In this document: in pieces, positions 4,728-57,480 of the stretch
Layout: each line of letters starts with the position of its first letter
Numbering within the stretch: position 1 is the first letter of the stretch
Virus record (IMG/VR): IMGVR_UViG_3300049001_000044
Location: 248,001-312,000 of that record
Strand: one strand, 5' to 3'
Length of the DNA stretch: 64,000 bases
The notes under the pieces: model-generated
Seen by the model: the letters and a program-made list of their open reading frames with translations, nothing else
Databases searched by the model: none
What the model was told of the DNA's origin: nothing
Made by a program: the position numbers and the translations under genes

Positions 4728-4979
4728 ATGAAGATCAAAGAACTGCTAGAGGGTGAGGTTGTTCAGGGCAATTTCCCAAAGCATGGAAAAGTTATTGTCT
4801 CAACTCGTAGAGATGTAGGCGATGAATGGAAGTATTGGACCGGCGTGAATTTCTTCGGTACTAAATCTCGGGCGCTGAAAGTTCCCATGAACAGCGTTGA
4901 TAAGTTGCTTTCTGATTGGGGATTGAAGCTAGATAAACCCACGAGATCAGGTGAAGCAAGAATCGAAAAGGTTCTATAA
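4728..4979 (+). CDS. Small hypothetical protein with capsid-targeting-like leader
   Basis: SD aagga; begins MKIKELLE|G. Confidence 0.7.
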   Translation: MKIKELLEGEVVQGNFPKHGKVIVSTRRDVGDEWKYWTGVNFFGTKSRALKVPMNSVDKLLSDWGLKLDKPTRSGEARIEKVL

Positions 4980-5063
4980 GGCCCAGAGATGCTTCTACTG
5001 CTCGATGTAGAAGCATCTTACTTTCAAGCAGAGAGGTCTCTGGGCCTCTCTAGTAAGCTCCAG
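4979..5063 (+). repeat. Dispersed structured intergenic repeat, copy 1
   Basis: aggcccagaga(4979-4989)/tctctgggcct(5037-5047) outer stem, 12-bp inner hairpin (4987-5018) and ctagtaagctccag tail; shares blocks with the copies at 28006, 38373 and 57401. Confidence 0.75.
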
Positions 5064-5071
5064 GATATACA

Positions 5072-5605
5072 ATGTTCACATTCAAAACCTACCTAACTGA
5101 ACTCCTCGATAGGACAGCTTCCCTTCACTACACTTTGGATTGGCCTGAAGAATTGGAGGCTGTTGCCGACATCAATGGCCGTCGTGTCATGTTTCAAGCA
5201 GGTCTAAACAACGCAAAGGATCCTGCACATTCATTTTGGGAAGTATCTTTCAAGGAGCGTGGCAGCTGGGGACACCAACTTAGTGGCAATCGTGGTGAAC
5301 TTGAGGTCTTTGCATCCGCAAAGGCATTCATCCAACACATTGTTGACACAAGAGATTCGCCAACAATCGTGTTTAGGGCAGATAATTTGGCAGGTGAAGA
5401 CTATACTAAGAGAGGCGAGCTGTACCAAAAGATGGCTGTCAAGTTCAAGCCAAAGAACTACACGCTGTTCATCGATAAGACCTTATCAGCCTTCCACTTC
5501 GTATTTAAACCGAAGAAGGAAGGGATAACGGATGTGGAAGTACGTGACGATAGAGAAAGAGAACGGCAGATCCAGCAGTACATGAAGGATCACGGTCTAG
5601 ATTAA
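5072..5605 (+). CDS. Hypothetical protein with capsid-targeting-like leader
   Basis: 177 aa; begins MFTFKTYLTE|L, close to the T4 internal-protein leader pattern. Confidence 0.75.
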   Translation: MFTFKTYLTELLDRTASLHYTLDWPEELEAVADINGRRVMFQAGLNNAKDPAHSFWEVSFKERGSWGHQLSGNRGELEVFASAKAFIQHIVDTRDSPTIVFRADNLAGEDYTKRGELYQKMAVKFKPKNYTLFIDKTLSAFHFVFKPKKEGITDVEVRDDRERERQIQQYMKDHGLD

Positions 5606-5640
5606 TCTGGGATCGCTTTTCCCAGATCCTGCTAGGAGGA

Positions 5641-5646
5641 TAAATA
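5641..5646 (+). promoter_or_regulatory. T4-like late promoter core
   Basis: ataaata just upstream of the giant ORF. Confidence 0.6.
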
Positions 5647-5686
5647 TCCCATACTTCATATGGGCACAACCTCTTATACGCAGGCC

Positions 5687-8600
5687 ATGGCAAATAAACA
5701 AAAGATCGATCTCAAAAAGTTCATTCCATCTAATCTTCGGAATGAACTCAACACCAGTCTCGCTGATAACCTGTTCAACCGATTCCTCTCCGAAGAGCAG
5801 AGCGTATCAGTGTCTGGCCAGGTTGGTAAGGTTACCGATCCTAATGATGCGGTGATCCAAGCCAGCGACCTTGACCGAGAACTCAACGCGCTCGTTCCCG
5901 CCCTGTACTTCAAGACAGGCGCTGAGGAAAGTCTGTTCACGTTCGACGACCTGCTCAACCGCATGGCGGCACTGGGCGTGGACATCAACAATCTGAAGTC
6001 CTCACTGTCTGAACAAAGTCTGAACTTGGCTCCTCCTATCGACTTGGACAAGTTCATCAACTTCTCCAACTACTACTGGACTGCAGTCGACGCGAAGCCT
6101 GTTCGCGCAGAGCAGACCATGGCCTGGAATACCGCGCTCAACGCCGAGTACTACGTCATCAAGCGCCCATCTGCTACTTCCAACATCAAGCTGCCTGTCA
6201 ACTTGGCAACGACCAATGACATCAAGCTGTATGGTAAGGGAAGAGAGCCAGAAAAAGTCACGGTTGAATTCCAAAGCAACGACACGTTCACAATCACCGG
6301 TTCAAACGGTCCACTGTCTGTTGACAAGAACCAACTGACTGGCATCAAGACGCTACTCACTGTCACCGGTCCAAACAGCCTCGCCCTGTTCAGCTTCCAA
6401 ATCACTCAAGGTAGTGAAGCATTTGAAGTGGGCGACAAGTTCGAGATCGACATTACCTACGTTACTGGTTCGAACACTGTCTCCTTCACCCCTGGTCCAT
6501 CTCTAATCACTTTGAGCAAGGGCTTCGTGTCGAACATCGTCGCTGACTCTCAGCTGATGATGGTTGACGGTGTGCGCGTCAAAGTCGGTGACACTGTGCT
6601 GGTGAAGAACCAAACTAACGCTGCTGAGAATGGCGTCTACGTTGTGAAGATGGACAAATGGTTGCGTCTCTCCAACTACAGCGATGCATCACATTTCCCA
6701 GCCAGTACTTCGATCTACGTCTACTTTGGTTCGCAAGCAGGTAAGACATTCACGTTGCAATCCACCGTGACTGAAGTGGGTGTGTCTCCTATCGTCTTCG
6801 CACCGGACACTACCAACCCTGCGATTGCGGTAAACGACTGGCAGATCTACAATTTCTGGGTTCACAAGGATGATCTGGACCCAACCTATACGAACGCGAC
6901 TCAAGCTACTCGCCCGATTATCGAGTACGACAATGATCTGCAACTGAACGCTGCTTTCGACGATGATGGTTACCCAACCATCGGTTCCTCTGCGCCTCAG
7001 TCAAAGACGCGCTTCAACCAAATTCCACAGTTCGACCTTTTCTACTACGACGGCCACCACGCTAAGAAGACGTCGGGTATTTTCTTCTACGAGGAAGACC
7101 CTGACTTCGACGTTGACGCGATCTTGCTGCGTCGTACCAAGCTCACTGTCAACGCAGACTACATGTTTGGCCTGGGTGTGAAGGATGAAGACGGTCGCCT
7201 GCTCTTCTTCAAGAAGCAAGGTGAGTTGAAATCCATCTGGGCTCCAGGCAACACCACCGCATCTGTCACCTCGCTCACTCTTAACGCAGAAGCAAGCGAG
7301 ATGAAGGGCAGCATTAGCACGCAAGTCTTTAGCTCGGCTGACACCCAAACTTGGACCATCACTGCAAAGTCTGCAACTACCTTTAGCGTCGTTGGCAGCC
7401 GTAGCGGTTACCAAGGCGATGCGATCATAGGTGTGGCATTCACTGCTCCCGACGACTTCGAAATTGTTATCAACGAAGGAAGCGTAGAGTATGCAGTGGG
7501 CGACACCTTCACCATGAACGTTGCGGGTGTGGTCGCGCCACGCTACGTCAAGAAGGTAGATGGGAATGTTGTGAACGTCGTAGGCGGTCCACTTGGCGAT
7601 ACTGCGCAGGAAGGTTCGTGGATGGTTCCTCGTCGCATGTTCGAAAACATGCTTCGCACTCTCTCCACCGAGATCGCATACGGCGACTTGGTTGATCACT
7701 GCCGTTCGATCATCAAGTCGCAAGACGGCTTCAAAGGTTCCAGCTTCGGTATCAACAACTACCGTCAACTCTCGCACAACCATGGTCTGGGCGGTAACAT
7801 CCGTGAGTACAACGGAAACTTCCCACTCCTTGCTTCCCTGCTGATGCAGCCCGGTATGTCGCCTCTGTCTATCATCGACTTTGGTGAGCAGCAGTATGCG
7901 ACTGCTCTGGCATCAATCGACCAATTCCTGTCGAATGAGCTGGCCAACTACATCGCTACCACTGCAGTTCCATCGCTTAGCTTGATTGATCCAACTGATG
8001 CGCAAGTACAGAACCTTCTCAACACCTTTGAGAACCTTCGTGCGAACGACCAACTCCTGAAGGACGTCTTCTCGGACTCTACCGCGTTGGTGAAGAACTG
8101 GCCTGTCACGCTGCCTATGATGGGTATCACGCGTAAGACGAAGCCAACTATCACGTTCGACATGGATCTAGGTATCGATGTTATCGTTCACCACGACAAC
8201 CACCGTTCACCACTTGCGGCGACTGATGTTGAATTCGATCGTAACCTCGCTCGCACCTTGGTTCGTCGCTCTGACAGCACCACTTCGGCTGGTGTCTTCG
8301 CGGAAGCAATGCCAAACCTTCCTTACGCTCGTCAGCTGTGGTTCAGGCCATCGACGAACGAACTGAAGGTGTTTGACGTCTTTGCGGATACGGACGAAGC
8401 TCCTGCATCTGGTGTTGATGGTCAGTTCTGGTACAAGCGCTCTGCGAATGAACTGCGTGAATGGGATAGCCTATCCAACACGTGGGTCATTAGCGCATCT
8501 ACCATCGCCAGCCGTTGGACCATTCTCAACAGTGCAGCGATTCGTAACAGCCTCGTACTGGCCGTTGAACAGAAGTTGGCTGATTCGGTTCATCCTTCGA

Positions 8601-11600
8601 TGACTCCACGTGTTGCGCTTTCATCGTACGACCTTGACGACATGGCCGCTGTTGAGCTGGCCAGATTCTCGGCTAAGTACGGTTACGACACTTACGCTAC
8701 AGTCTTCGATCAGTCGGACGCATTCACCTGGAACTACAGTATGATGTTTGGCGATGCAAGATGGTTCGATGTCTACGCCACCTACTTCTACAATGAAGTC
8801 GGAGTAGTTGATCTCAAGCGTCCTAACATTGAACCTTGGAAGCTGCTTGGCCTAACCGATAAGCCTTCTGACTGGGATGCTAAGAACGCAGGTGTTGACC
8901 GTCTGTGGAAGACCGAGATGTGGTTGGACATTATGGCTGCAAAGCCAGGCCTGAAGCTGTGCGTTGACATCAACACCGACGCTTTGCTCCCACCATACGT
9001 TTCTTCCTCGCTGCCTGAATCGCAATACGCGCTTACCACCGTTAAGCCAGAAGGCATCGCGAACACCTACAGCTTCCAAGACAACGGTCCAGTTGAGAAC
9101 ATCTGGAGAAAGTCACTTGAGTACGGCTACAGCTTGGCTCGCATCTACTTCAAGCGTCAGCCTCTGCGCTTCGTTGAGAATCTGTGGGGCACCACCTACA
9201 TCTACCCATCCAGCAACGCTCTGCGTCTGGAACGAAACCTGTCTCAGCCATCGTCGCCATCGAAGTTCCTCCTCCATGGTGAGCGTCTCCACAACATCGT
9301 TGAGCGTGATGCAAGTGAACACTTCATCGGCAAGGTGCGCATGAGCAGCACCGCTACGGCGAACGTTGAGTTCCAAGTCACTCACACTGACAACAACAAA
9401 ACCTACTTCTACGCTTACATCAACGGCGCGCTGAAGATGATCGTTGAGGAAGGTAAAGTGTTCAGTTTGAGTGGTGACGGTGTCATTATCAATGACGTCA
9501 TCATAGATGACATGGGTATCCCATTCTCTCTTGGTGATAAATTCACTATCAAGTACACCGCTACGCCTGACCCTGCAGTTGATCCAGCACCGCCTGTCGA
9601 TCCAGAAGATTGTGGCTGCGTCGTCCCAGGAACCAATGATACTCTTCCATACCCACAAGTCGTCGTGACTTCGGTCTGGACCTTTACCCCTGCGAAGACG
9701 AAGAAGTACAACGGTGTTGGTCAACTCTACACCAATCTGCTGCGCTATAACTACATCGACACTGACATGTCGAAGGCAACCAACGCATATCGTAGTTGGG
9801 ACGTTCGCCTGGTTCACCGTCTTGGCGCTCTGATCCGCGGTGACTCTCTTGAAATCGACACCGCGCTTGGTACTCTGCCTGAGACCGCATACAATTTGCT
9901 GTTGAAGCGCAGTGAGTATCTGGACAGCAAGTGGATTTCTGCTCTTCGCATCCAGCTGGTTCAAGCTGGTAAGCGTGTCGCGACCAGCGCGGGCAACTAC
10001 ATTCCTGTTGGTGCAGGCGAAGACTGGGTCTTCCGTCTAGAGACGTACAACCCACAGCACCCGCTCATCGAGTACTACTCCTATGAGCAGGACGAGTACC
10101 TGACCTTCAACGCACTGCAGGGTCAAACGACCAAGCTTGAGTGGAAGCACCGCACTAAGCGCGCACATCTCAACCAAGTCACTACTCCTATCGCCATCAC
10201 TGGCGTGCAGAACCTAATCGACGTTATCTTCGGTTACATCGAAAGACTTGAAGAAGTTGGCTTCAAAATCAACATGACCGAGGATGTTGTCGTTGATGCA
10301 GAGACCGGCCGCAACCTTGATTGGCAGTTGGAAGTTGAAAAGCTGGTGGATCGTATCTACACGAACATGGGACCAGGTAATGGTCACGTATTGAATCCAT
10401 TCCTCCACGCTCTCTACGTTGAGACTCCTACTGGTCTGCTGTCACGCTACACTGAAAGCAGCTTCATCGACACGACTGCGGCGCAGGCAATCTTCGACGT
10501 GACTGGCAAAGTAATCCCAATGAACAACCTCTACGTTGTTCGTACGGACGATTCTGCCGTCACTTACTCGGATGTTCCTATCTTCTCTGCCCACGTCTTC
10601 AACGATGAGTTTGAACACGTGATCGTCTTCAACACCCGTCTGTCGGATGAAATCGGTAGCTCGACCATCTTCGACCCATTCCTGGGTATGAGGATCGACA
10701 CCGCTCGCCTCGCATACACTCGTCAGGCAGAGGTAGATAGGAAGCCTAGGTTCCACGGCTTCGTCCTTAACGGCAATGACGTGAGGCGCAACATCGTATC
10801 GAGCGTGGATTCCATCGCCAACTATTACGATGCATCGAAGACGTTTAACGAGCCAGCGACAGCTAAGCACGCACTATCTCTGCTCGGCTTTAGTAGCAAG
10901 CAATACTTCGCAGACATCGGAATCAGCGACGCAACGCAGTTCAACTTCTGGCGCGGTCTCATTCAAGCTAAGGGTACGAACATGTCGATCGATGCGTTCG
11001 TCAACTACAAGAAATTCGCTGACGCTTCCGTCGATGAGTACTGGGCTTACAAAGTTGCTGACTATGGTGATGCACGCCCTCGCAATCTGCCTGAGATCAA
11101 AATTGAGCAGGCCGATTGCCAGCAGTCGTTCACTCAACTGCAATTCTACGACGCGACCACGGACCACGACCAGCTTCCTCAGTTCATCCAAATCGAAAAG
11201 GAAGATGACGCTCGTTGGTTTAGCATTGATGATCTGGGCGTGGGCATGGTATTCGATGCTCTGCCTACTTCTGTCACCGTCACCGCGGCAAATGTTGGCT
11301 ACTACCAGCTCAACACCATCTTCCATAACGGAGATGATGGTGCACCGACTGTGACGAAGAATGGTCTGGCAACGAACGACGCCACGATGGTGAACGCTTC
11401 CCTCCTGAAGGTGAACGTTGCTGGTACCTACGTCGTCAATGGATACACCTGGGCTAACCCAGTAAAGCAGTCGCCTGTCAAGCTGTTCGACTACAAGACC
11501 AACACACTGGTCAAGCAGATCGCGCTGTGGCACCCAGCTATCGGTATCCACGCCCACGAGCCACTGGAGATCATCAACACCGTTTCGAAGGCAGATCCTG

Positions 11601-24094: not shown

Positions 24095-24408
24095 AGCGTC
24101 TAATCCTTACCCTTCCTATCCTCCTCGCCGCATGTGGTCACGTTCCTCCTAAGCCAGAGCCAATCGTTGTTCCTCGTATGGAGTACGTCATCAAGGTTCC
24201 GCCTGCTGAGACCATGCGACTGCCTGCCAAGCCAGCGAAGATCGATGTGGACAAAACGGACTTGAAGCAAAGTGATGTCGCCAACTTCATGAGCAATTCT
24301 GAGGACTACACTATTCAGTTGGAAAACAAGCTCATCACCATTGCCAAGTTCTTCACCGACGAACAGCAAAAGCTGGACGACAAAGCCAAGAAAGAGAATA
24401 GCAAATGA
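24091..24408 (+). CDS. o-spanin (Rz1-like lipoprotein)
   Basis: Signal peptide with lipobox LAAC; Pro-rich mature region. Confidence 0.8.
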   Translation: MKRLILTLPILLAACGHVPPKPEPIVVPRMEYVIKVPPAETMRLPAKPAKIDVDKTDLKQSDVANFMSNSEDYTIQLENKLITIAKFFTDEQQKLDDKAKKENSK

Positions 24409-26012
24409 GTTGCAATTGCCCGCCTCCAGAGCGCACATCGCTCTGGACTCCCATTCCTCAACTGAGACAGCCAACAGACATGCTGCCTGGTGAGAACATT
24501 GACTGCTTCGCGCGGCGAGCTGGTGATCCAACTGGCCAGCAAGATGACGCGCGACAGGATCCAGAAAATCGAATTCAAAACACCTCCATTAAAGTGGTGA
24601 AAGCCGCTGATGGTAAGCACTTCAAGGTGGATGAAGAGATGACCCTATCGAAAGGACCGCGCAATGCTAAGAAGTGGAAGATCAATCCACCAACCGGGTC
24701 GCTAACCATCAATGACGAAGGCAAGCTGACGGGGTCCATTGACGAAGGGACTTATAAGGTGACTGTCACTGTAAGCGATGATGAAGGAGATATCGACAGT
24801 AGAGAATTTACCGTCGTTGCTGCAGAGGCTAAGAAGGGTGAAAGCATTTCCCTTTGCATTCCATACGTCAGCACGAATGGTCAAACGCCACGAGTCAACT
24901 CTGGCTTCGGTCCTCGCATGCACCCTATCCACAAAGTGATGAAGCTGCACAAAGGCCAGGATTGGGTTGGTGGCAGACAGGGTAAGATCGTCGCGGCCGC
25001 CGATGGCGAGGTCGTGTTCTGTGGTAATGCTGGTGCATACGGTAACCAAATTAGAATCAACCACCTAGCTGCTGACGGTTCGATCATTGTTCAAACTACC
25101 TACAACCACCTCTCACAAATCCTCGTTACTAGGGGTCAGAAGGTTGCTCAAGGCCAGGCAGTCGGTAAGGAAGGTTCAACTGGTGCGTCGACTGGTAATC
25201 ACCTCCACTTTGAAGTGCTACTGGGCGGTAAGCAACACGTTGACCCAGCTCCCTACCTCAGTGGAACTTTCACCGTCCAACCACCAGCGCAGGCAGATGG
25301 AACGCAACCACCTCCTAAGACGGTCGATAACAGCGGTGGCGCTGCGGCGCCTATTACACTTAGCGAGACGAACGCCCGCACTGCAAGTGACTGCCCTCAA
25401 GTGCTAGACTCGGGCGCGACGCCGGTGAATAGTAACTCAAGCTACCCACAACCAGGTGACGACTTCAAAAACCAGGCCGCCACGACAAGCGACTGCAAGC
25501 CAGAGAAGAGACCTTCTTATTCAGAAGTAAGTGCGATGATTGATGAGGCGCTCAACGGCGCAGCGGGATTGGACGCAGAGGATAAGAAACTGATTCGCTT
25601 CATTGCACAGATTGAGAGTAGGTTCGATCCATACGCGAAGAACCCAACAAGTTCGGCGATGGGATTGTATCAGATGTTGGACAAGATTGCGGTAAAGTAC
25701 TTCGGCATTATCGGCGTTCCACCAACATGCGTTAACCGATGCAATGCTAAGTACGCAACACAGGCGATGATCGAGTTCTACAAGAGGGAATTGAAGTCGT
25801 ACTACGATGGATACAAGGCGTCGGGTGGAACAAAGATTGCTAATAAGCCGATCAAGCCAACACCACATAGCCAACGCTATCCATCTCTGTCAAAGGGAGA
25901 GTTCTGTTATGGACTCATTCACCATGATGGAGTTGGTAGCGCTGTGAATGGAAAGGATCTACAGGGCGTAGACTATTTCCGTAAGAAGGTTAAAGAGACT
26001 GGCTTTGCTTAA
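24405..26012 (+). CDS. Multidomain peptidoglycan hydrolase: Ig-like + M23 peptidase + lytic transglycosylase
   Basis: M23 motifs HKGQD and STGNHLHFE; SLT motifs IAQIESRFDPYA and AMGLYQML; coupled to the o-spanin stop (ATGA). Confidence 0.85.
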   Translation: MSCNCPPPERTSLWTPIPQLRQPTDMLPGENIDCFARRAGDPTGQQDDARQDPENRIQNTSIKVVKAADGKHFKVDEEMTLSKGPRNAKKWKINPPTGSLTINDEGKLTGSIDEGTYKVTVTVSDDEGDIDSREFTVVAAEAKKGESISLCIPYVSTNGQTPRVNSGFGPRMHPIHKVMKLHKGQDWVGGRQGKIVAAADGEVVFCGNAGAYGNQIRINHLAADGSIIVQTTYNHLSQILVTRGQKVAQGQAVGKEGSTGASTGNHLHFEVLLGGKQHVDPAPYLSGTFTVQPPAQADGTQPPPKTVDNSGGAAAPITLSETNARTASDCPQVLDSGATPVNSNSSYPQPGDDFKNQAATTSDCKPEKRPSYSEVSAMIDEALNGAAGLDAEDKKLIRFIAQIESRFDPYAKNPTSSAMGLYQMLDKIAVKYFGIIGVPPTCVNRCNAKYATQAMIEFYKRELKSYYDGYKASGGTKIANKPIKPTPHSQRYPSLSKGEFCYGLIHHDGVGSAVNGKDLQGVDYFRKKVKETGFA

Positions 26013-27945: not shown

Positions 27946-27972
27946 GTTTACCTTTCTTCTTAAGATACTATC

Positions 27973-28004
27973 ATTGTAAATCGACATCAATCATACAAAA
28001 ACTA
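27973..28004 (-). promoter_or_regulatory. Putative phage early/middle promoter tagttttt-N18-tacaat
   Basis: Same geometry at 38597, 43949 and 57388. Confidence 0.6.
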
Positions 28005-28005
28005 A

Positions 28006-28092
28006 AAGGCCCAGAGGTGTTAGCTCTGGGCCTTAATGACTTCTATGTCGAATTTTGCAGGAGGTCTCTGGGGTCCTCTGGTGACCTCAGAG
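28006..28092 (+). repeat. Dispersed structured intergenic repeat, copy 2 (includes a minus-strand terminator-like hairpin)
   Basis: aaggcccagag-gtgttag-ctctgggcctt hairpin, then gcaggaggtctctggggtcctctggt. Confidence 0.7.
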
Positions 28093-28097
28093 CTATA

Positions 28098-34865: not shown

Positions 34866-35075
34866 TTACGATCCCAACTCTTGCTTGACGATCGCAGCCA
34901 GCTCCATGTCGATCTGTCGAATAGCTGCTTCAGTCTTCAAGGCGGCTTCCCTTTCCTTCTCCAACTCAACCTGCCATCGATGCCGAAGAGCGACCAAGTC
35001 CTGCACTTGCTCACTGAACTTGGAGAGTGAGTAGCTGGTGTCGTCGATGATGATCTCAGAAATTTGTTGAACCAT
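34866..35075 (-). CDS. Small hypothetical protein
   Basis: 69 aa; SD ggagg inside the end of the helicase gene. Confidence 0.65.
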   Translation of the reverse strand: MVQQISEIIIDDTSYSLSKFSEQVQDLVALRHRWQVELEKEREAALKTEAAIRQIDMELAAIVKQELGS

Positions 35076-35076: not shown

Positions 35077-36414
35077 TTAACCTCCCGTTTGGAACAAGTT
35101 CATTACGTCGTTACCCTTCTTCTGTCCGCCAATCGCGATCGGTGTTTCAGGGATAACGACTTGACGCTTACCAGGAACCTTCAGCTCTTGCTTCTTGCCA
35201 GCCCTCGAAGAAACAACCAGCGATACTGGATCCCAACCAAGTCGTACGCTTGCACCAACACCGCCAGAGTTACGGGACTTCAAGATGTCGTACTGGATTT
35301 CGCCTTGCGACCGCATCAGATCATCTTGCTTGATACCAATCACGTAGTCAGAAGTGTTGATCTTGGAGATACCACCCTGAATGTGCGATTGATTCAGCTT
35401 CTCTGCTTCGATAGCTGCACGACCCAGCTGAGCTGCAGAAACCATGATGCAGTTGTAGTCAAAGCCCAGCGAACGAATCTCCTCTGTGACGTACTTATCC
35501 TTGATGAAGAGATTGTCAAGGGAGATGTTGTGAGTGGTGCCCATGATGTCGATGTAGTCGACGATGATGAAGTCAGGACGGAAACCATTCGCTTGTTCCA
35601 ACTGTTGGAGATAAGCTTGGATGGTGTGGATGTTGGTACGATTCTCTGCAAATCGCTTCACGAAGAATCTTCCGTAGCCCTTTGCACCAGCTTTCTCAAC
35701 CGCTGCTGCGACCTTGTGCATGTTCTTCAGCAGATCAGCCTGGCTGATCGCGGACACCATCGAGTCTAGACGTTTCGTCACCACGCCTTCGGCCATCTCC
35801 AATGTGATGTAGATGCCGTTAAGACCTTGCTTCAGGAAGTTGTGGGCCAAGTTCAACATGTTCATCGACTTACCACCGCCTGAGTTAGCGAGGAACGTGA
35901 TGAGTTCTTGTCGAGCCAGACCGCCACCGATCAGCTCGTCAATCTCTGGAAGACCAGTGCTGATGCGTGATTGCGTCTGCAAAGTTGCTTCAAGACGAGC
36001 GGTTGGATCGGCGAAGTAATCGATACCAATGTCCTTCTGCAGGCCAGTGGTAATGGCGTTCTTCAAGTTCTCAATAATGGCGCCCATGTCACCCTTCTTC
36101 AAGAGCTCTGGGCCAGCCAAGATCGCTTCAGTCACCGCACTATCGCGGCAGAACTTTTCGATCTCTTCACTGATGTATGTTGTCTCTGCACGAGAGATGA
36201 CGCCAACATCATCCAACAGTTGGCCAGTTTCGGCACGGATGATTTGGATCTTTGGTACGTCTTTGTATTGGTTGAAGTAGTCGCTGAGGAACTTGACGGT
36301 CTTCTTCAGCGATGGGTCAAAATAGCTGGGCTTCAGGAGACCGGCAGTCAGTGCCATGAGGTCTCGGTTTGCGCACAGCGCGGAGAGGATCAGTCTTTGC
36401 TTTTCAATATCCAT
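35077..36414 (-). CDS. gp41: Replicative DNA helicase (DnaB/T4 gp41-like)
   Basis: Walker A ANSGGGKS, ITLEM, IIVDYID, SAAQLGR, LKSRN. Confidence 0.93.
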   Translation of the reverse strand: MDIEKQRLILSALCANRDLMALTAGLLKPSYFDPSLKKTVKFLSDYFNQYKDVPKIQIIRAETGQLLDDVGVISRAETTYISEEIEKFCRDSAVTEAILAGPELLKKGDMGAIIENLKNAITTGLQKDIGIDYFADPTARLEATLQTQSRISTGLPEIDELIGGGLARQELITFLANSGGGKSMNMLNLAHNFLKQGLNGIYITLEMAEGVVTKRLDSMVSAISQADLLKNMHKVAAAVEKAGAKGYGRFFVKRFAENRTNIHTIQAYLQQLEQANGFRPDFIIVDYIDIMGTTHNISLDNLFIKDKYVTEEIRSLGFDYNCIMVSAAQLGRAAIEAEKLNQSHIQGGISKINTSDYVIGIKQDDLMRSQGEIQYDILKSRNSGGVGASVRLGWDPVSLVVSSRAGKKQELKVPGKRQVVIPETPIAIGGQKKGNDVMNLFQTGG

Positions 36415-37709: not shown

Positions 37710-38336
37710 TTATAGTCGGTCAGACTCTAGCGATTTGATGTTCTTCAAGACGCTAATCGTGTAACGATTAGTGCGGGGATTTTTGGATTTGGCACCGTGA
37801 GGACCTAAGTTAAATGCTAGTGCCAACTTAGCTATTGTAACATAGCCTAGCCGGCTTAAAACTAGCGTGTACTTAGACGCGACTGATGCATTGAATCGTT
37901 CGTCATTCTTCAACTTGGAGATGACCTCCTTATCCGACTTTCCGCGGAAGCCAAATTCTTCCCAGAGAGATGGATAAGCCCGCAGAGCTTCACGCGCCGC
38001 GACCAATTTGATTTGAAAGATTCCGTAGCAATCACTTCCTTTACGGAGCTTGGTTTCCCCAGCATTGGTTTCCTGCAAGAGGAGACCTTGAAGAAGCTGC
38101 GGGTGTTCATGCCCATCGTCCTTCGCTACTTGGTAGACCATCGTGAGCAGCTTGGCCTGGTGTTCGCTAAAACGTTTGGACAGGTTCAAAGAAAATCCAT
38201 CAGGAACGACGGTCTCAGGTGCAACATCTGTGACAGGCGTAGTGGTGGACGCGATGACAGGAATCACAGTAAGTGAAGATGTGATTCCAAATGAAAGCGC
38301 TGCAACGAGCGCTAGAGCGGAATTGCTCCATTTCAT
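37710..38336 (-). CDS. Lytic transglycosylase (SLT-like) with N-terminal signal/anchor
   Basis: LLQET (catalytic Glu), YGIFQIK, AFNLGP; hydrophobic N-terminus; SD aaggag before ATG 38336. Confidence 0.8.
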   Translation of the reverse strand: MKWSNSALALVAALSFGITSSLTVIPVIASTTTPVTDVAPETVVPDGFSLNLSKRFSEHQAKLLTMVYQVAKDDGHEHPQLLQGLLLQETNAGETKLRKGSDCYGIFQIKLVAAREALRAYPSLWEEFGFRGKSDKEVISKLKNDERFNASVASKYTLVLSRLGYVTIAKLALAFNLGPHGAKSKNPRTNRYTISVLKNIKSLESDRL

Positions 38337-38372
38337 AGGTAAGGCTCCTTTCCTTGTGTCATAACACATACG

Positions 38373-38466
38373 CTGGAGCTTACTAGAAGCGCCCAGAGGT
38401 GTTAGGACCGTTAAGATGATAGCTTCATCATCATTAAGCAGCAGGACCTCTGGGAGGTCCTGCTGC
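38373..38466 (-). repeat. Dispersed structured intergenic repeat, copy 3
   Basis: ctggagcttactag is the reverse complement of 5050-5063; gcccagaggtgttag is identical to 28009-28023; 13-bp hairpin gcagcaggacctc/gaggtcctgctgc. Confidence 0.75.
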
Positions 38467-38571
38467 GAGGCGGTGGTCTACTTTCGATTTAGAGAGCAGA
38501 GCTTCGTTTTTATATTGCCCAGGTTGCACGACCGAAGACTCCGACGGTCTCTGAGCTTGCTGCTTGACAGG

Positions 38572-38596: not shown

Positions 38597-38628
38597 ATTT
38601 TAACAAAATGATAACCTGGCGAAAACTG
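38597..38628 (-). promoter_or_regulatory. Putative phage early/middle promoter cagttttc-N18-taaaat
   Basis: Directly downstream of a terminator; recurring geometry. Confidence 0.6.
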
Positions 38629-43948: not shown

Positions 43949-43980
43949 ATTTTATACATCATCAACACTTTAAAAAACTG
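43949..43980 (-). promoter_or_regulatory. Putative phage early/middle promoter cagttttt-N18-taaaat
   Basis: -10 sits in the loop of a 14-bp inverted repeat aagtgttgatgatg/catcatcaacactt. Confidence 0.6.
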
Positions 43981-47008: not shown

Positions 47009-49705
47009 TCAGAATTCAAGCAGACGTTTTACATGAACGCCTTGAGGAGTTGGGACTTCATGACCAAGAGCAGCGAACACACCACCCAGTTTCGCATCGA
47101 ACATCTTCTGCTCCGTCTTCTTAATGTCGACGCTGAAGTTCTCCACGAACCATTTCGGGAATCGCAGCAGTTCGGCTGGCAGGGCGATCGACTTCATCCC
47201 ATAGTTGTTGGGCTTGAGGTAGTAAACCAGACCCTTGTCACCGCTTCGAATCGACTTTGCACCCTTGTCGAACTCATCCAACAGCATGTTGTAGTTCATA
47301 GCTGCCATCGCGTGACCTGGGACACGAGGCTTCTTACCTATGCCACCGTTCTTCTGCCAAACGAAGTACTCAGCTGTGTACTGCTCCAAGTTGTTGATTT
47401 GCTTTGCCACACCCAGCAGGAAGACGTTGTCAGGGTTCTTCAACACAATCCTACGCTGGCTGTTCACGTAGTCAGAGACGGTGTCGAGGTCTTCACCATT
47501 CAAGATCATGTCCACAGTCTCTTTCAAGAACTTCTGGATAATCTTCGGGGTATCGGCCTTCTTAATCTCCGAGCCTTGCGACTTCATCTTGTCGACGCGC
47601 TTGCCTTCGATGTCGAAGCACTTGATCATGTACTTCTTCTTCGCTTGGAACAGGCCACGAACACCAACAACTTCCCTTGCCGCTTGGATGTGGGTGTCAA
47701 AGCCAGGCTGACACAGGAATCCATTCCTCATCAAGTCAGGGAACGAGTCATTCACTAGCTTTGCCACTTCATCAGCGATCGCCACTGCGGTGTCATTGTC
47801 CTCTGCACCCACGCACTTGAAGTAACCAGAGTCGGTGTCAGAGTAGATGATCGCATCGCTGTCGATCGTGTAAAGAATCTGCAGATCGCCTTTGTCGTCG
47901 ATGATGCGCTGCTTCTTCAGTGGGACTTGCTCACCAGTCAGGTAGAAGTTCAGCGTCTCCAACATGTGCTTGGTGATTCGACGGCCAGATGCGGTAACTG
48001 ATGCACCCATTCGTTCGTCACCGAAGCGGAAGGCCACGTTCAGCAGAGCGCCATACAGCGAGTTCATCGAGATTTTCTTGGTCAGCTGGAGAAGATCAAA
48101 CTGCTCAGCCAACTTCTCGTACTCTGCCTTCTTGACTGGATCCTCTTCCTTGTCCGCCAACTTGGAGTATTTCTTCTTTTCTGCCTGAAGACGAATACGC
48201 TCAGTGTACCAGAAACCAAGAATGTCTGCAACGACACCCCTTCCGTTACCTTGATCGAAGACAGTGCCGTAGCCAGAGACTGCCCACTTGTTGTCGATGA
48301 GGATCTGTTTCCATTCAGCAGCAGTCTTCACATGCTGGGTGCCATCTTCCAGAATCAGTGTGCAACGTACTGCGTGATCGCCACGGTTGATTGCTTCCCA
48401 ATCTGCTTCATCTTCAGTGTTGGTGAACTGACCGATGATCTTCTCAGGGGAGATGTTGATGGAACGAATGACGTTTGGATACAGCGACTTGATGTCAACT
48501 GATGCTGGCAGATCATGCATGCCAACCTTTGGCGACAATACAACCGCGCCCTCAACCTTGTTGTTCTGCCCAATGACCTTATCATGGACGATCTTGTTCA
48601 GAACTCTGTGTGCGTGGTTGGTAATGCCCGTCTCCACGTACTTCACAGTACCAAGAATAGCTGCGAAGTCGACGGTGTTTTCGTGCGCCATCTGATTGAC
48701 TAGCGCAATGAACTTGAACTTCTGATCCAGCTTTACCAGCACTTCAACGTCTCGTGCGTTGTATGTGATGAAGTGGATGAAGTCGTTTAGGTACAGTTCT
48801 TCCAGGGTACCGTCATAGTCCAGCTTTGGTACGTCCAGCTCTTCGTTCGCGATGTTTGCCAGCGCATAGGAGGTGCGACCTTCGAACGTGAACTTCTCGA
48901 ACAGTTGGCGGTAGTCAAGGTGCGAACGACCTTGGAACTTGTAGACTGGTTCTTCGTTGCCGAAGTGGTTCATCATCTCCTTGCGAGGAGGACGGCAGCC
49001 GGGCAGCTCCAGACTTGACAGAGCTTTTTCACCCATGAGCAACTTGATGCGTTCGCAGACGTAGGGTACGTCATAGAACTCCGAGTTCCAACCACTGATG
49101 ATGTCAGCGTCTTGGATCAAGTCAAGGGTTCGTTCGAGCAGTTCCAGCTCGTCTCGGCAAATGATGATGTTGGGCTCGAAGCCCATCTTCTGCTGTTTCC
49201 AATTCTCATGGATTTTATCCATGAACGTCTCATCTATCACATAGCCTGGCGGAGGAACAGCTAAGGTGATGTACTCGTTAGTCCACGAGCTGTAGATAGT
49301 GTTGGCGTTGATTGGGGCGTAAGGGTTCGAAGGGCCTGCAAAGCCAATCGACTGTTTGTAATCAACCTCAATGTCGAAGAAGACGAAGTTGACAGGAGGG
49401 GTGGGACGTCCGTAGTACATATCCATCAGCACTCGGGCGAGTGGACGAATATCGGACTCAAACTTGACTGGACATGCACGAGAAAGGTAGTCGAACTCCT
49501 CTTTGGAGTCTGCGTCAACCCTCGCAAGCTTGTCACCAAAGATCGACTCATACTCACCATCTTCGTCAGGGACGTAGAAGTAGTAAGGAGGTTTCACTAA
49601 GGTGGTGAAGCGCTCACGCGTCTCGATGTCGCGTTCTACAACGACGACTCGATCTTGCTTGTAGTCCATCCAAGCAGCGATGTAATTGCTAGTGGCTTCA
49701 GTCAT
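47009..49705 (-). CDS. gp43: DNA polymerase, family B (T4 gp43-like)
   Basis: ExoI FDIE, GWNSEFYD, YNARDV; DIKSLYP, KISMNSLYG, YSDTDS, KKKY. Confidence 0.97.
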   Translation of the reverse strand: MTEATSNYIAAWMDYKQDRVVVVERDIETRERFTTLVKPPYYFYVPDEDGEYESIFGDKLARVDADSKEEFDYLSRACPVKFESDIRPLARVLMDMYYGRPTPPVNFVFFDIEVDYKQSIGFAGPSNPYAPINANTIYSSWTNEYITLAVPPPGYVIDETFMDKIHENWKQQKMGFEPNIIICRDELELLERTLDLIQDADIISGWNSEFYDVPYVCERIKLLMGEKALSSLELPGCRPPRKEMMNHFGNEEPVYKFQGRSHLDYRQLFEKFTFEGRTSYALANIANEELDVPKLDYDGTLEELYLNDFIHFITYNARDVEVLVKLDQKFKFIALVNQMAHENTVDFAAILGTVKYVETGITNHAHRVLNKIVHDKVIGQNNKVEGAVVLSPKVGMHDLPASVDIKSLYPNVIRSINISPEKIIGQFTNTEDEADWEAINRGDHAVRCTLILEDGTQHVKTAAEWKQILIDNKWAVSGYGTVFDQGNGRGVVADILGFWYTERIRLQAEKKKYSKLADKEEDPVKKAEYEKLAEQFDLLQLTKKISMNSLYGALLNVAFRFGDERMGASVTASGRRITKHMLETLNFYLTGEQVPLKKQRIIDDKGDLQILYTIDSDAIIYSDTDSGYFKCVGAEDNDTAVAIADEVAKLVNDSFPDLMRNGFLCQPGFDTHIQAAREVVGVRGLFQAKKKYMIKCFDIEGKRVDKMKSQGSEIKKADTPKIIQKFLKETVDMILNGEDLDTVSDYVNSQRRIVLKNPDNVFLLGVAKQINNLEQYTAEYFVWQKNGGIGKKPRVPGHAMAAMNYNMLLDEFDKGAKSIRSGDKGLVYYLKPNNYGMKSIALPAELLRFPKWFVENFSVDIKKTEQKMFDAKLGGVFAALGHEVPTPQGVHVKRLLEF

Positions 49706-55695: not shown

Positions 55696-55724
55696 ATCAT
55701 ACAGCTATTGTAGCTTGATGGCAA
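55696..55724 (-). promoter_or_regulatory. Sigma70-type promoter TTGCCA-N17-TATGAT
   Basis: Canonical spacing, immediately upstream of the SD of 55684. Confidence 0.6.
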
Positions 55725-55735
55725 CCTCAATGAAA

Positions 55736-57085
55736 CTACGTCCTGCCCACCAACATGTAGCGATCATATTGGATGAACGTCCTCGTACCCTCATACAGAA
55801 CTTCCGAAAGATTGAGTGCTTTACGGAGTTCATGTGAGTTGTTGACGCATGAGACGTGCCCCTCGCCTTGAAGGTAGTTGTTGTTCTGCACAATGATTAG
55901 CTTTCCAGCGGGAATCTTCTCACGCCATGCAGGGATATTTGGGATATGTTCTGACGAAGTGTTGATGATGACGTCAAACTGCGAGTAGTCAAGTTGGTAC
56001 ATGTCCATCGTCATCGTACCAAATCCTTCGTAGTCGTAATTGAGTTTTTCAGCGATACGATTGGCGCGCGGATCCAAGTCTATCGACGTCACCTTCAATG
56101 ACAGCTCCTTACAGTGGAGCATGAGAGTGAGGGTACCGATCCATCCACCAAGAATTGCAACTCTACTTCCCTTCTCCAACACGCCTTCATCTAACATCGA
56201 CTGAAGTCTCTCAGCCAACCACATCTTGCTGAGGATTTGCCCATCTGAAATTGCATCCCTAATCTCAGTCAATGGAAGATTTCCCAACACGTAGGGATCG
56301 TATAGCGCGCTAGCAATTCGGGTGGTGAAGAAGAATTCTTGTTTCATTGGATGGTCAGGTGCTGGAGTTGGATCTTTGATAGGATCAATGGTTGGGTCGG
56401 TCGAGGGAGCTTCGATCAAATCACCTAGCAGTTTAAGCATGAAGTCATGGTCATTGATGAACATGAGATCAGCATTTTTCTCTGCCTCCTTCACACCTAA
56501 TTCTGCGGCTTGCCTGATGATGTCGCTAAAGTCGCAAGGGATTGGATTCAACCATCTCTTCAATCGATCCTCGGCTTCCATTCTAACGAACTTCGGCTTA
56601 ATAGGATCCTGTGTTGTCCTCCACAACTTTGCTGCCTCCCTAAATGCGCCGCGGGCACTACGATAGTGATCGCTGTTGAAGTGAGTGGTGCAGACAGTTT
56701 GCGGGATAACCTTGATGTCCTTCGTCAGAGTCGTGGTGAAATCAAGCTGAGATTGGACGTTCTTAAAGAAGGCCTTGTTGAATAGCTTGACGCCACCGTA
56801 CCCATAACTAATGCCTAACGCAGGGTTCATCGCGTACCAGACATGGACATAGTTCTCATCACCCTCTTTAGGCTTGTAGGAGAAGTCGAAGGTGGGATGA
56901 ATAGTGGCGTCAGCATCGACCACGTAGAAGAACTTGGTGAGAGCTTTCTTCGAGGCGGCAATGTGAGCGTTGGCGATACCCTTTACTCCGTGGACACGGC
57001 GGGCATGAGGAAAGCGAGCCTTCAACGCAGCGAAGTTCTTGTCTGCGTTGGGCTCGTCGTATGAGATGAAGATGATGTCTAGCAT
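55736..57085 (-). CDS. Glycosyltransferase (GT-A/GT2-like) fused to a class I SAM methyltransferase
   Basis: N: DIIFISYDEP, RVHGVKG, YVVDAD (DxD), YGYGGVKL; C: AILGGWIG, SIDLD, IINTSSEH. Confidence 0.8.
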   Translation of the reverse strand: MLDIIFISYDEPNADKNFAALKARFPHARRVHGVKGIANAHIAASKKALTKFFYVVDADATIHPTFDFSYKPKEGDENYVHVWYAMNPALGISYGYGGVKLFNKAFFKNVQSQLDFTTTLTKDIKVIPQTVCTTHFNSDHYRSARGAFREAAKLWRTTQDPIKPKFVRMEAEDRLKRWLNPIPCDFSDIIRQAAELGVKEAEKNADLMFINDHDFMLKLLGDLIEAPSTDPTIDPIKDPTPAPDHPMKQEFFFTTRIASALYDPYVLGNLPLTEIRDAISDGQILSKMWLAERLQSMLDEGVLEKGSRVAILGGWIGTLTLMLHCKELSLKVTSIDLDPRANRIAEKLNYDYEGFGTMTMDMYQLDYSQFDVIINTSSEHIPNIPAWREKIPAGKLIIVQNNNYLQGEGHVSCVNNSHELRKALNLSEVLYEGTRTFIQYDRYMLVGRT

Positions 57086-57089
57086 GCCG

Positions 57090-57095
57090 TATTTA
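57090..57095 (-). promoter_or_regulatory. Late promoter core inside a hairpin, 4 nt from the ATG
   Basis: tgccgta-aa-tacggca-tg. Confidence 0.55.
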
Positions 57096-57107
57096 CGGCA
57101 CGTAGAA

Positions 57108-57353
57108 TCACGGTAGGAAGTAGATGTACTTGGAGTCGATGCTCGTGACGTTCGTGTCGGTCATCGACGCCTTGTTCTTCAGGACACGGCCATCAGTGGA
57201 ATCGGTCATGCGAGACAGCGTACGATCGACGAAGGCCTTTGGATAGCGACGGCCCAGCTGCGTCTCGACGATGTGATGGAGCTGATTGCTGTCAGAGCGG
57301 ACAGTGGTTTTCAGTGCGTTGATAATGATGGATGGAACAGTTTGCTTTGCCAT
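57108..57353 (-). CDS. Small protein, possibly winged-helix
   Basis: ATG 57353 with SD gaaagg. Confidence 0.6.
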   Translation of the reverse strand: MAKQTVPSIIINALKTTVRSDSNQLHHIVETQLGRRYPKAFVDRTLSRMTDSTDGRVLKNKASMTDTNVTSIDSKYIYFLP

Positions 57354-57387
57354 GGTGATACCTTTCATCGAAGTTAGTTAACGTAAA

Positions 57388-57419
57388 ATTTTAGAACGTA
57401 GGAGGTGCTCGAAAAACTG
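57388..57419 (-). promoter_or_regulatory. Putative phage early/middle promoter cagttttt-N18-taaaat
   Basis: Recurring geometry. Confidence 0.6.
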
Positions 57420-57480
57420 CGTGTAGTGGCTGTCAACAGCTTTGCATGGAGGTCTCTGAGCACCTCTGGTAAGTCCCAGC
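57401..57480 (+). repeat. Dispersed structured intergenic repeat, copy 4
   Basis: gcatggaggtctctgagcacctctggtaagtcccag matches the 3' block of copies 1 and 2; gaggtgctc/gagcacctc stem. Confidence 0.65.

What the first reader, a model, noticed from the sequence alone, without database searches (positions are those of the whole stretch)
4979..57480. Four-copy dispersed, structured intergenic repeat (CCCAGAG / GAGGTCTCTGRG..CCTCT.GTAAG)
Seen: copies at 4979-5063, 28006-28092, 38373-38466 and 57401-57480, plus a fragment ggtctctgagc at 38546-38556. Exact shared blocks: ctagtaagctccag (5050-5063) equals the reverse complement of 38373-38386; gcccagaggtgttag at 28009 and 38391; gaggtctctg in copies 1, 2 and 4. 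Each copy can fold, with mutually exclusive stems (copy 1: 4979-4989/5037-5047 versus 5030-5036/5045-5051). Three copies neighbour small leader-bearing genes and three lie next to the AGTTTT-N18 promoter. Known: T4-like phages have promoter-stem-loop (PeSL) elements that shuffle accessory genes. Inference: an undescribed mobile regulatory or recombination element, ncRNA, or protein-binding site family.
Basis: partly seen in the sequence, partly recalled or inferred. Interest (0 to 1): 0.65.

Follow-up and report, generated by a model that had tools for sequence, protein, structure and literature searches.

The report
Dispersed palindromic repeats in jumbo phage
A 343-kb soil jumbo phage carries about 28 intergenic copies of a ~113-bp two-armed repeat whose conserved cores are almost always exactly 49 bases apart. 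It is most likely a once-mobile DNA module read by a protein rather than a folded RNA, and such repeat families are rare in phages.

Summary
The four window copies belong to a family of 27 full or near-full loci plus one half copy in a 343,229-bp soil jumbo phage genome.

Each element has two inverted arms. Each arm is made of two 10-bp CYCAGAGGTG-type units. The signature is CYCAGAG-N49-CTCTGRG: the spacer is 49 nt in 28 of 32 aligned copies and 48 or 50 nt in the other four.

All but one locus are intergenic, in both orientations. They usually lie between a stop codon or terminator and an early promoter (AGTTTH-N17-19-TAHAAT).

A sister phage at about 75% nucleotide identity has elements at all 8 orthologous loci that could be compared. 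A more distant relative has 2 copies at other loci. Forty-three further relative records and 185,579 prokaryote genomes have none.

No conserved RNA fold was found: RNAalifold gave 0 pairs and arm pairing equalled the shuffled controls. Cores are 80-84% identical between orthologues, against 46% at 4-fold degenerate sites. Core types switch at orthologous loci, which points to gene conversion. No transposase, recombinase or RNase III gene was found among the nine Pfam families tested.

Best reading: a REP/BIME- or MITE-like, once-mobile double-stranded DNA module recognised by an unidentified protein. Its function is unproven.

The parts
4977..5068 (+). Copy 1. The left outer arm is missing. 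Left core CCCAGAG is at 4982-4988, the 49-nt spacer at 4989-5037, and right core CTCTGGG at 5038-5044. The right outer arm runs to 5063, followed by a TAT flank. An 11-bp local hairpin pairs 4988-4998 with 5007-5017. The ATG of the next + strand gene is at 5072.
   Evidence: genome 252977-253062, E 5.5e-13; z -3.68. The orthologous copy is in sister contig L001.
28000..28095 (+). Copy 2. CAGAG is at 28012-28016, followed by a 49-nt spacer and CTCTG at 28066-28070. The right outer arm is intact. The left core plus the first part of the spacer form a terminator-like hairpin on the minus strand.
   Evidence: (genome 276000-276090, E 1.8e-14). The orthologous copy is in L002 at 11235-11271.
28006..28034 (-). 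Intrinsic-terminator-like hairpin (11 pairs, tail TTAGTTTTTG) built from the left core of copy 2.
27973..28003 (-). Early-promoter-like site (AGTTTT-N19-TACAAT). It overlaps the transcription-downstream end of copy 2 by 4 nt.
38368..38470 (+). Copy 3. The left outer arm is intact from 38373. CAGAG is at 38394-38398, followed by a 49-nt spacer and CTCTG at 38448-38452. The right core has grown into a 13-bp local palindrome. The copy lies in the 5' leader of a minus-strand gene for a signal-peptide protein.
   Evidence: genome 286373-286465, E 5.6e-14; z -5.79. The orthologous copy is in L002 at 130-265.
38597..38627 (-). Early-promoter-like site upstream of copy 3, in the direction of transcription.
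   Evidence: The order terminator, promoters, element, gene was read.
38546..38556 (+). Solitary core-like 11-mer GGTCTCTGAGC. It is not part of a full element. TCAGAGACC is kept in the sister phage.
57388..57483 (+). Copy 4. The right arm is intact (57447-57483, with CTCTGAG at 57454-57460). The left core is degenerate, ends 49 nt before the right core, and is overlapped by an early promoter. The right end overlaps the stop codon of the minus-strand gene 57481-57912.
   Evidence: arm E 1.5e-10; genome 305402-305478. The orthologous copy is in L011.
57388..57418 (-). Early-promoter-like site (AGTTTT-N19-TAAAAT) lying inside the degenerate arm of copy 4.

Best explanation
The element is a lineage-specific, REP/BIME- or MITE-like dispersed repeat that works as double-stranded DNA.

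Anatomy: each ~113-bp unit carries four 10-bp CYCAGAGGTG-type sites, arranged as two inverted pairs. The innermost cores (CYCAGAG and CTCTGRG) are held 49 bp apart.

History: the module was copied in the past to unrelated intergenic gaps as a non-autonomous element. It landed mainly in the gap between a stop codon or terminator and the next early promoter. Copies still exchange sequence with each other by gene conversion.

Proposed mechanism: the conserved cores and the rigid spacing are read by a sequence-specific, probably dimeric or tetrameric DNA-binding protein that has not been identified. The most likely present role is a nucleoprotein 'border' at the edges of early transcription units, acting as a roadblock, an insulator or a topological site.

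Shown here: the family, its geometry, its intergenic placement, its conservation in the sister phage, its turnover in a more distant relative, and the lack of a conserved fold.

Inferred: protein binding, the mode of spread, and the border function.
For: Family size and placement:
- 27 loci plus one half copy; 25 of the 26 first-found loci are intergenic.

Rigid geometry:
- The spacer is 49 nt in 28 of 32 aligned copies and 48 or 50 nt in four, although only a few spacer positions are conserved.
- Across all spacings from 20 to 99 nt in the genome, strict core pairs occur only at 48 (1), 49 (10), 50 (1) and 59 (1).
- Arms consist of 10-bp units, direct or inverted. One copy carries an extra tandem 10-mer.

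Sequence conserved, pairing not:
- RNAalifold predicts 0 pairs.
- The arm-arm helix pairs in 66.0% of cells against 66.8 +/- 1.0% in shuffles.
- The local hairpin pairs in 72.9% against 72.5%.
- Spacer covariation stays within the null range.
- Spacer folding energy has a median z of 0.

Both orientations occur:
- 19 to 8 relative to transcription.
- By my hand tally from the arm hits, intact outer arms face sense about 13 times and antisense about 11 times.

Constraint:
- Orthologous cores are 80-84% identical between this phage and its sister, against 46% at 4-fold sites.
- All 8 comparable loci are shared with the sister.

Past copying:
- Flanking genes are unrelated to one another.
- Relative G001 has 2 members at loci that are empty here, and none was seen at the four window orthologues.
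- 43 other relative records have none.

Gene conversion:
- Multi-base core types swap at 3-4 of 7 orthologous pairs, and the inner boxes are swapped at the 330-kb locus.

Placement:
- 12 of 27 loci have an early promoter starting 30 nt before to 34 nt after the element end, p=0.011.
Against: - No binding protein is identified.
- None of seven transposase or recombinase families tested is present in the genome.
- No target-site duplication can be read.
- There is no presence/absence difference between this phage and its sister (0 of 8). Active mobility is therefore not shown, and core conservation could be concerted evolution rather than selection.
- The distance from the element to the promoter -35 varies (4 to 34 nt, or overlapping), so it is not a classical operator or activator site.
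- Every single copy folds much better than shuffles, z -2.6 to -9.1. G.U slightly exceeds A.C in the transcribed sense, 54 to 36, p=0.07. A generic hairpin role in RNA is therefore not excluded.
- The host is unknown and no RNA data exist.
Confidence: 0.4

Rival explanations
1. A purely selfish MITE/REPIN-like element with no role for the phage. The arms are terminal inverted repeats for a transposase supplied in trans by the host or by an unrecognised phage gene. The similarity of cores between phages reflects gene conversion among copies.
For: - Inverted arms of about 26-34 nt, small size, non-coding, multi-copy and intergenic.
- Expansion limited to one lineage.
- Different loci are occupied in G001.
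- Many copies have one arm eroded.
- Core-type switching shows copy-to-copy exchange.
- Flanking genes are unrelated.
Against: - No transposase of seven families tested in the genome.
- No copy in 185,579 prokaryote genomes beyond chance single hits.
- No target-site duplication.
- 8 of 8 loci are shared with a sister whose 4-fold sites are only 46% identical, yet cores stay 80-84% identical and the spacer length is unchanged. That is unexpected for neutral relics.
Confidence: 0.25
2. An RNA element. Read-through or leader transcripts fold into long hairpins that act as processing sites (RNase III type), 3'-end stabilisers (as REP sequences do) or terminators.
For: - Each copy folds far better than shuffles, z -2.6 to -9.1.
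- About 60% of copies can pair their arms over a long range.
- Many copies start within a few bases of a stop codon.
- Two copies lie between a stop codon and a terminator.
- Copy 2 contains a terminator-like hairpin.
- Copy 3 lies in a 5' leader.
- Weak excess of G.U over A.C in the transcribed sense, p=0.07.
Against: - No consensus structure and no covariation in any tested helix.
- The fold differs from copy to copy.
- Left and right core types are mismatched in about half of the copies.
- Both orientations occur.
- Many copies lie downstream of a terminator, where little RNA is expected.
- The phage has no RNase III gene.
- A rigid 49-nt spacer is not explained by a generic hairpin.
Confidence: 0.2
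3. A PeSL-type recombination module. The repeats mainly provide dispersed homology, so that small gene cassettes in variable regions can be excised, inserted and swapped.
For: - The elements occupy the PeSL position, between a terminator stem-loop and an early promoter (definition in PMC4122927).
- Gene-content differences touch the element at the 253k, 276k, 10k and 5k loci.
- Copy-to-copy exchange is seen.
Against: - No enrichment at indel junctions: 2 of 5 against 13 of 45, p=0.63.
- The conserved repeat does not contain the promoter in 10 of 12 promoter-linked loci.
- 15 of 27 loci have no strict promoter match nearby.
- Homology alone does not need a fixed 49-nt spacer or four conserved units.
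Confidence: 0.1

Closest known systems
REP / BIME-1 (RIP) and REPIN elements of bacteria
   Same: - Dispersed, intergenic and roughly 100 bp long.
- Two inverted repeat units flank a linker of fixed length.
- Several unit types are combined in a mosaic.
- Single units also occur.
- BIMEs are bound as DNA by proteins (gyrase, IHF, Pol I; from my own knowledge).
   Different: - This family is in a virulent-type jumbo phage, not a bacterium.
- No RAYT (Y1 transposase) is present.
- There is no GTAG head.
- Units are 10-bp direct or inverted repeats rather than one imperfect palindrome.
- No IHF consensus was seen by eye.
- No host copies were found.
Bacterial MITEs such as Correia/NEMIS, ERIC and RUP
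   Same: - About 105-155 bp long with 26-bp-class terminal inverted repeats.
- Intergenic and present in many copies.
- They can sit next to promoters and fold in transcripts.
- Such elements are rare in viruses: 0.01% of viral sequences in PMC11602168.
   Different: - No target-site duplication could be read.
- No parent insertion sequence or transposase was found.
- The interior is strongly diverged, yet the length is fixed to the base.
PeSL (promoter-early stem-loop) cassettes of T4-like phages (PMC4122927, PMC2839356)
   Same: - Repeated composite signals lie between small early genes of a T4-related myovirus.
- A stem-loop sits just upstream of an early sigma-70-like promoter.
- They are proposed to mediate modular shuffling.
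   Different: - A PeSL is the terminator, promoter and Shine-Dalgarno sequence itself.
- Here a separate 113-bp four-site module sits between terminator and promoter at 12 loci, and without a promoter at 15.
- A link with indels is not shown.
Stoperators of mycobacteriophage L5 (own knowledge)
   Same: - Some two dozen copies of a protein-binding site lie in short intergenic spaces across a phage genome.
- They act on transcription passing through.
   Different: - Stoperators are single 13-bp asymmetric sites in one orientation, bound by the known repressor of a temperate phage.
- Here the module is large and two-armed, occurs in both orientations, and its binder is unknown.
RNase III processing sites of phage T7 (own knowledge)
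   Same: A family of related intergenic hairpins between cistrons.
   Different: No conserved fold, no covariation and no fixed strand are seen here.

Membership tests
PeSL | The conserved motif contains a sigma-70-like early promoter | tested here: not met
   A strict promoter lies near 12 of 27 loci. In 10 of those 12 it lies mostly outside the repeat. It lies well inside a degenerate arm (about 30 nt) at only two loci, genome 152668 and 305390.
PeSL | Stem-loop or terminator directly upstream of the promoter | tested here: inconclusive
   The element occupies that position and often follows a separate ordinary terminator. Only copy 2 is itself terminator-like.
PeSL | Enriched at insertions, deletions and replacements between closely related phages | tested here: inconclusive
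   2 of 5 element junctions against 13 of 45 other junctions differ by more than 150 nt, Fisher p=0.63. The sample is small.
MITE | Terminal inverted repeats; small, non-coding, multi-copy | tested here: met
   Arms of about 26-34 nt are inverted. The element is about 113 bp and occurs at 27-28 loci.
MITE | Target-site duplication flanking each copy | tested here: inconclusive
   No direct duplication can be read. A TA lies 2-3 nt outside many arms but behaves as part of the inverted repeat. Few copies keep both ends.
MITE | A cognate transposase or autonomous parent element | tested here: not met
   No Y1_Tnp, TnpB, DDE_3, rve, DDE_Tnp_1, tyrosine or serine recombinase in the genome. Proteins between neighbouring copies have no such domains. 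No bacterial genome carries the repeat.
MITE | Presence/absence polymorphism between related genomes | tested here: inconclusive
   0 of 8 loci differ from the sister phage. All 6 loci compared with G001 differ.
REP/REPIN | RAYT (IS200/IS605-type Y1 transposase) in the same genome | tested here: not met
   PF01797 gives no match in the complete genome.
REP/REPIN | Two inverted units forming a doublet at fixed distance | tested here: met
   CYCAGAG-N49-CTCTGRG. The spacer is 49 nt in 28 of 32 copies.
Structured cis-acting or non-coding RNA family | Conserved secondary structure supported by covariation | tested here: not met
   RNAalifold gives 0 pairs. Tested helices equal the shuffles. Spacer covariation stays within the null range.
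Structured cis-acting or non-coding RNA family | Match to a described RNA family | tested here: not met
   No Rfam hit at gathering score in the window. Seven copies give only sub-threshold miRNA-hairpin hits.
Intrinsic terminators | G+C-rich hairpin followed by a T run | tested here: not met
   Only copy 2 of the three window copies scanned qualifies. No T run follows the arms in general.
CRISPR repeat mimics (solitary repeats, RNA anti-CRISPR) | Identity to a repeat array in a host genome | tested here: not met
   The 18-mer core gives only single, unrelated hits in 22 of 185,579 genomes. That is about the number I estimate for chance (roughly 17). No arrays were found.
Integron attC sites | Integron integrase and one orientation relative to cassettes | tested here: not met
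   No tyrosine recombinase. Both orientations occur.

The most novel reading that the evidence does not exclude
The module CYCAGAG-N49-CTCTGRG, with four 10-bp sites, is the target of an as yet unknown protein system carried by this phage lineage. That system would be either a transposition or copying machinery with no recognisable transposase, or a dedicated 'border' protein that partitions early transcription units. On this reading it is a new kind of phage-borne mobile insulator, not a decaying MITE.
Probability: 0.25. Interest if true: 0.75.

Novelty: new variant of a known kind. Interest (0 to 1): 0.55.

Why it matters
Dispersed repeat families are common in bacteria but very rare in phage genomes, where every base is under pressure. 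This is a 28-locus family that keeps its core sequence and an exact 49-base spacing while neutral sites are close to saturation between two phages. That implies a protein partner and a role, or a copying mechanism, that is not yet known for T4-related jumbo phages.

If it marks the borders of early transcription units, it would add a new layer to phage gene regulation. If it is mobile, it would be a transposition-like process without a recognisable transposase.

The signature is also a sharp marker for this soil phage lineage.

Tried and rejected
Known RNA families and other genome collections:
- Rfam and tRNA/tmRNA: nothing.
- Nucleotide search of an element against 50,697 phage records: no match.
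- Host REP, MITE or CRISPR origin: exact 18-20-mers in IMG/VR, JGI metagenomes and 185,579 genomes found only contigs of one sister phage. The other hits are single, unrelated and coding, at about the number I estimate for chance.

Enzymes that could move or cut the element:
- RAYT, TnpB, DDE_3, rve, DDE_Tnp_1, tyrosine and serine recombinases, and RNase III are all absent from the genome.
- Proteins next to clustered copies are an RF-1-domain protein, a PAAR protein, a DnaJ homologue and unknowns. None is a transposase.

Functional ideas tested on the sequence:
- Arms as outward-firing promoters: by my tally, intact arms face sense about 13 times and antisense about 11 times, and in copy 1 the ATG follows the arm by 3 nt. 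Rejected.
- Central hairpin as a family feature: only 6 of 32 spacers fold with z below -2.
- Restriction-site-like avoidance of CTCAGAG outside elements: 8 observed against 16.6 expected. Unremarkable.
- An IHF consensus in the spacer was looked for by eye only and not seen.
- Link with gene-content breakpoints: not significant.

Other data sources:
- The analogous place in more distant relatives holds late promoters inside hairpin loops, not this element.
- The complete relative G004 has no comparable repeat family.
- Sequencing runs: only soil-metagenome DNA runs were found, none on record as RNA. Laying contigs on window 26500-30500 (4,001 bases, within the operators' limit) showed the source contig and no variants.


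Full report
**Observation.** These are the 14-mer at 5050-5063 and its reverse complement at 38373-38386, the 15-mer at 28009 and 38391, GAGGTCTCTG at 5033, 28061 and 57449, and the fragment at 38546-38556. The two competing stems of copy 1 are complementary as described. The window is positions 248001-312000 of a single 343,229-bp contig with 50.5% G+C. IMG/VR classes that record as complete with direct terminal repeats. Its DNA polymerase B is 47% identical to that of Ralstonia jumbo phage RsoM2USA and 38% identical to that of XacN1. The only sequencing runs that hold it are soil metagenomes.

**Size of the family.** GAGGTCTCTG occurs 19 times in the genome against about 0.65 expected. An arm profile finds 39 arms at 26 loci. 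A full-length profile finds 27 loci plus a half copy at 107460-107504. The element's 12-mers are the most frequent 12-mers of the genome, at 18 copies. 'Four-copy' therefore describes only the window.

**Anatomy.** Aligned copies show the following parts in order:
- an outer arm, TA-nn-CTGGRRCTTACC;
- two 10-bp units of the type CYCAGAGGTG;
- a spacer;
- the two units inverted;
- the inverted outer arm.

The inner unit next to the spacer comes in two forms. One is direct (GAGGTGCTC, A, GAGGTGTTC). The other is inverted, which makes a small local palindrome (GAGGTGCTC, A, GAG(C)ACCTC). The core also comes in two forms, GTGCTCAGAG and GGCCCAGAG. GAGGTGCTC occurs 28 times against 2.6 expected, 25 of them inside elements. 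Many copies have lost one outer arm.

**Rigid spacing.** Between CAGAG and CTCTG the spacer is 49 nt in 28 of 32 aligned copies, 48 nt in two and 50 nt in two. Only a few spacer positions are conserved. Across all spacings from 20 to 99 nt in the genome, strict CYCAGAG...CTCTGRG pairs occur only at 48 (once), 49 (ten times), 50 (once) and 59 (once). The 59-nt case is a copy with an extra tandem 10-mer. Three window copies match CAGAG-N49-CTCTG exactly. The fourth has a degenerate left core at the right distance.

**Context.** By my own gene calls, 25 of the first 26 loci are intergenic. The phage's early promoters are recognisable as AGTTTH-N17-19-TAHAAT. There are 55 matches, all on the minus strand and none in the control. 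Six lie in the window against 0.10 expected. Late promoters carry ATAAATA. Read in the direction of transcription, the usual order is stop codon, ordinary terminator, element, early promoter, Shine-Dalgarno sequence, gene. Twelve of 27 loci have a strict early promoter starting 30 nt before to 34 nt after the element end, binomial p=0.011. At two of these loci, including window copy 4, the promoter lies about 30 nt inside a degenerate arm. At two further loci, including window copy 2, it overlaps the element end by 4 and 15 nt. The distance to the -35 box is not fixed. Two copies lie between a stop codon and a terminator, and copy 3 lies in a 5' leader. Orientation relative to transcription is 19 to 8, p=0.05. 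By my hand tally from the arm hits, intact outer arms face sense about 13 times and antisense about 11 times.

**Relatives.** Exact 18-20-mers retrieved only contigs of one metagenome (L001-L004, L011, L031), which are 68-80% identical to this genome. The remaining 37 metagenome hits and 22 genome hits are single, unrelated matches, at about the number I estimate for chance. In this sister phage an element sits at every one of the 8 orthologous loci covered. Fifty-seven further relatives were found through the 1219-aa protein, at 42-66% identity. They have no arm hits in the fetched loci. The strict signature is absent from 43 of 44 whole relative records, which include four complete genomes of 345-368 kb. 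The complete relative G004 has no comparable repeat family.

The exception is G001, whose copy of the 1219-aa protein is 66% identical. It has two members:
- one with a 59-nt spacer between homologues of window genes 34866-35075 and 31025-34786, where this genome has only a terminator and a late promoter;
- one with a 49-nt spacer at a convergent junction, with a bidirectional terminator in its centre.

No element was seen in G001 at the orthologues of the window copies. The family is therefore confined to one lineage, stable between close relatives and relocated between more distant ones.

**Is it a folded RNA?** Each copy folds much better than shuffles, z -2.6 to -9.1, but in different ways. 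Some pair their cores over a long range, while others form two or three local hairpins. On the 32-copy alignment RNAalifold predicts no pair at all. The 20-bp arm-arm helix pairs in 66.0% of cells against 66.8 +/- 1.0% when right arms are shuffled among copies. Left and right core types are thus not matched within elements. The local GGAGGT/ACCTCY hairpin gives 72.9% against 72.5%. In the ungapped 49-nt spacers the strongest covariation (0.26) lies below the 95th percentile of the null (0.29). Spacer folding energies have a median z of 0, and only 6 of 32 fall below -2. In the transcribed sense G.U slightly exceeds A.C, 54 to 36, p=0.07. Rfam gives nothing. What is conserved is sequence and distance, not pairing.

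**Constraint and exchange.** Between this phage and its sister, 4-fold degenerate sites are 46% identical and codon positions 1 and 2 are 88% identical. Orthologous element cores are 80-84% identical and spacers 60%. At 3-4 of 7 orthologous pairs the core has switched from one family-typical form to another, for example GAGCACCTC to GGGCCTC. At the 330-kb locus the two inner boxes are swapped while the centre stays colinear. Such multi-base switches are best explained by gene conversion between copies.

**Mobility.** The genes flanking the 27 loci are unrelated to one another, apart from one small paralogue trio. The module therefore spread without its neighbours. No target-site duplication can be read. 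The genome has no Y1, TnpB, DDE_3, rve or DDE_Tnp_1 transposase, no tyrosine or serine recombinase, and no RNase III. Neighbours of clustered copies are an RF-1-domain protein, a PAAR protein, a DnaJ homologue and unknowns. Gene-content differences with the sister touch some elements (253k, 276k, 10k and 5k loci). They are no more frequent there than at other junctions: 2 of 5 against 13 of 45, p=0.63.

**Interpretation.** These features together fit a double-stranded DNA module recognised by a sequence-specific protein better than a structured RNA:
- conserved 10-bp units one helical turn apart;
- two inverted pairs at a fixed distance;
- indifference to orientation;
- no covariation;
- purifying constraint.

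The placement in terminator-promoter gaps, the unrelated flanks and the different loci in G001 show that the module was copied around as a non-autonomous element. I therefore read it as a REP/BIME- or MITE-like family, now probably serving as, or tolerated as, a nucleoprotein border at early transcription units. My confidence is 0.4. The binding protein, the copying mechanism and the function are all inferred.

The rivals are:
- a purely selfish element kept similar by gene conversion (0.25);
- a generic RNA hairpin for processing, stability or termination (0.2);
- a PeSL-type recombination module (0.1).

**Comparison with known systems.** PeSLs of T4-like phages are the terminator, early promoter and Shine-Dalgarno composites themselves (PMC4122927). 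This phage has such composites, and the element is an extra module placed between stem-loop and promoter. In architecture the nearest analogues are bacterial BIME-1/REPIN doublets and MITEs of the Correia type. However, their defining partners (RAYT, a transposase, a TA duplication) were sought and not found. A survey of viral MITEs found them in only 0.01% of viral sequences (PMC11602168). I could not check whether this record is among them, because no supplement was held.

**Limits.**
- Only one close relative is available, and only in fragments.
- No RNA data and no host are known.
- Gene calls are my own.
- The alignment of the spacer relies on its constant length.
- The orientation and arm tallies were partly counted by hand from profile hits.

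Noticed in passing
window 27973-28003, 37834-37863, 38597-38627, 43949-43979, 55707-55737, 57388-57418 (all minus strand): The early-promoter-like motif AGTTTH-N17-19-TAHAAT has 55 matches in the genome, all on the minus strand. None are on the plus strand and none in a reversed control.
   Followed up: partly
L092, L095, L097, L124, L130, just after the homologue of the 1219-aa gene (about 30-120 nt past the match end): In more distant relatives the late-promoter motif GGATAAATA / GAATAAATA sits in the loop of, or between the arms of, a perfect inverted repeat.
   Followed up: no
L011 3860-4573, inside the orthologue of window gene 57915-59075 (minus strand): In the sister phage this 386-aa gene is split by an inserted ORF. 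That ORF is 36% identical to this genome's own gene at 212171-212890. It looks like a homing-endonuclease or intron-type insertion that is absent here.
   Followed up: no
window 4728-4979, 28098-28412 and 55736-57085: An 83-aa ORF, a 104-aa ORF and a 449-aa ORF of this phage have no counterpart at the corresponding places of the sister contigs (L001, L002, L011). The first two abut element copies 1 and 2.
   Followed up: partly
whole genome: Other repeated words are a terminator palindrome GGGAGCCTAGGCTCCC (8 copies), TATAGCCTTATC (7 copies), ATGAGATTCAAA (8 copies) and tRNA T-arm words (8 copies). The tRNA words suggest a tRNA gene set outside the window.
   Followed up: no
window 24405-26012 (+), 35077-36414 (-), 47009-49705 (-), 37710-38336 (-): - 24405-26012: M23 peptidase plus SLT transglycosylase protein.
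- 35077-36414: DnaB-like helicase.
- 47009-49705: family B DNA polymerase.
- 37710-38336: a signal-peptide protein lies downstream of copy 3. Its true start is the ATG near 38336, not the longest-ORF start at 38369.
   Followed up: partly
genome 3696-4373, 154050-154565 and 334931-335797 (L168, L169, L170): Accessory genes next to elements include an RF-1-domain (peptidyl-tRNA hydrolase-like) protein, a PAAR-motif protein and a DnaJ homologue.
   Followed up: no
window 38442-38470 and L002 about 150-185: The right core of copy 3 is embedded in a perfect 13-bp palindrome. The sister phage has a different sequence there that still pairs. This is a local compensatory pattern not shared by the family.
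   Followed up: partly
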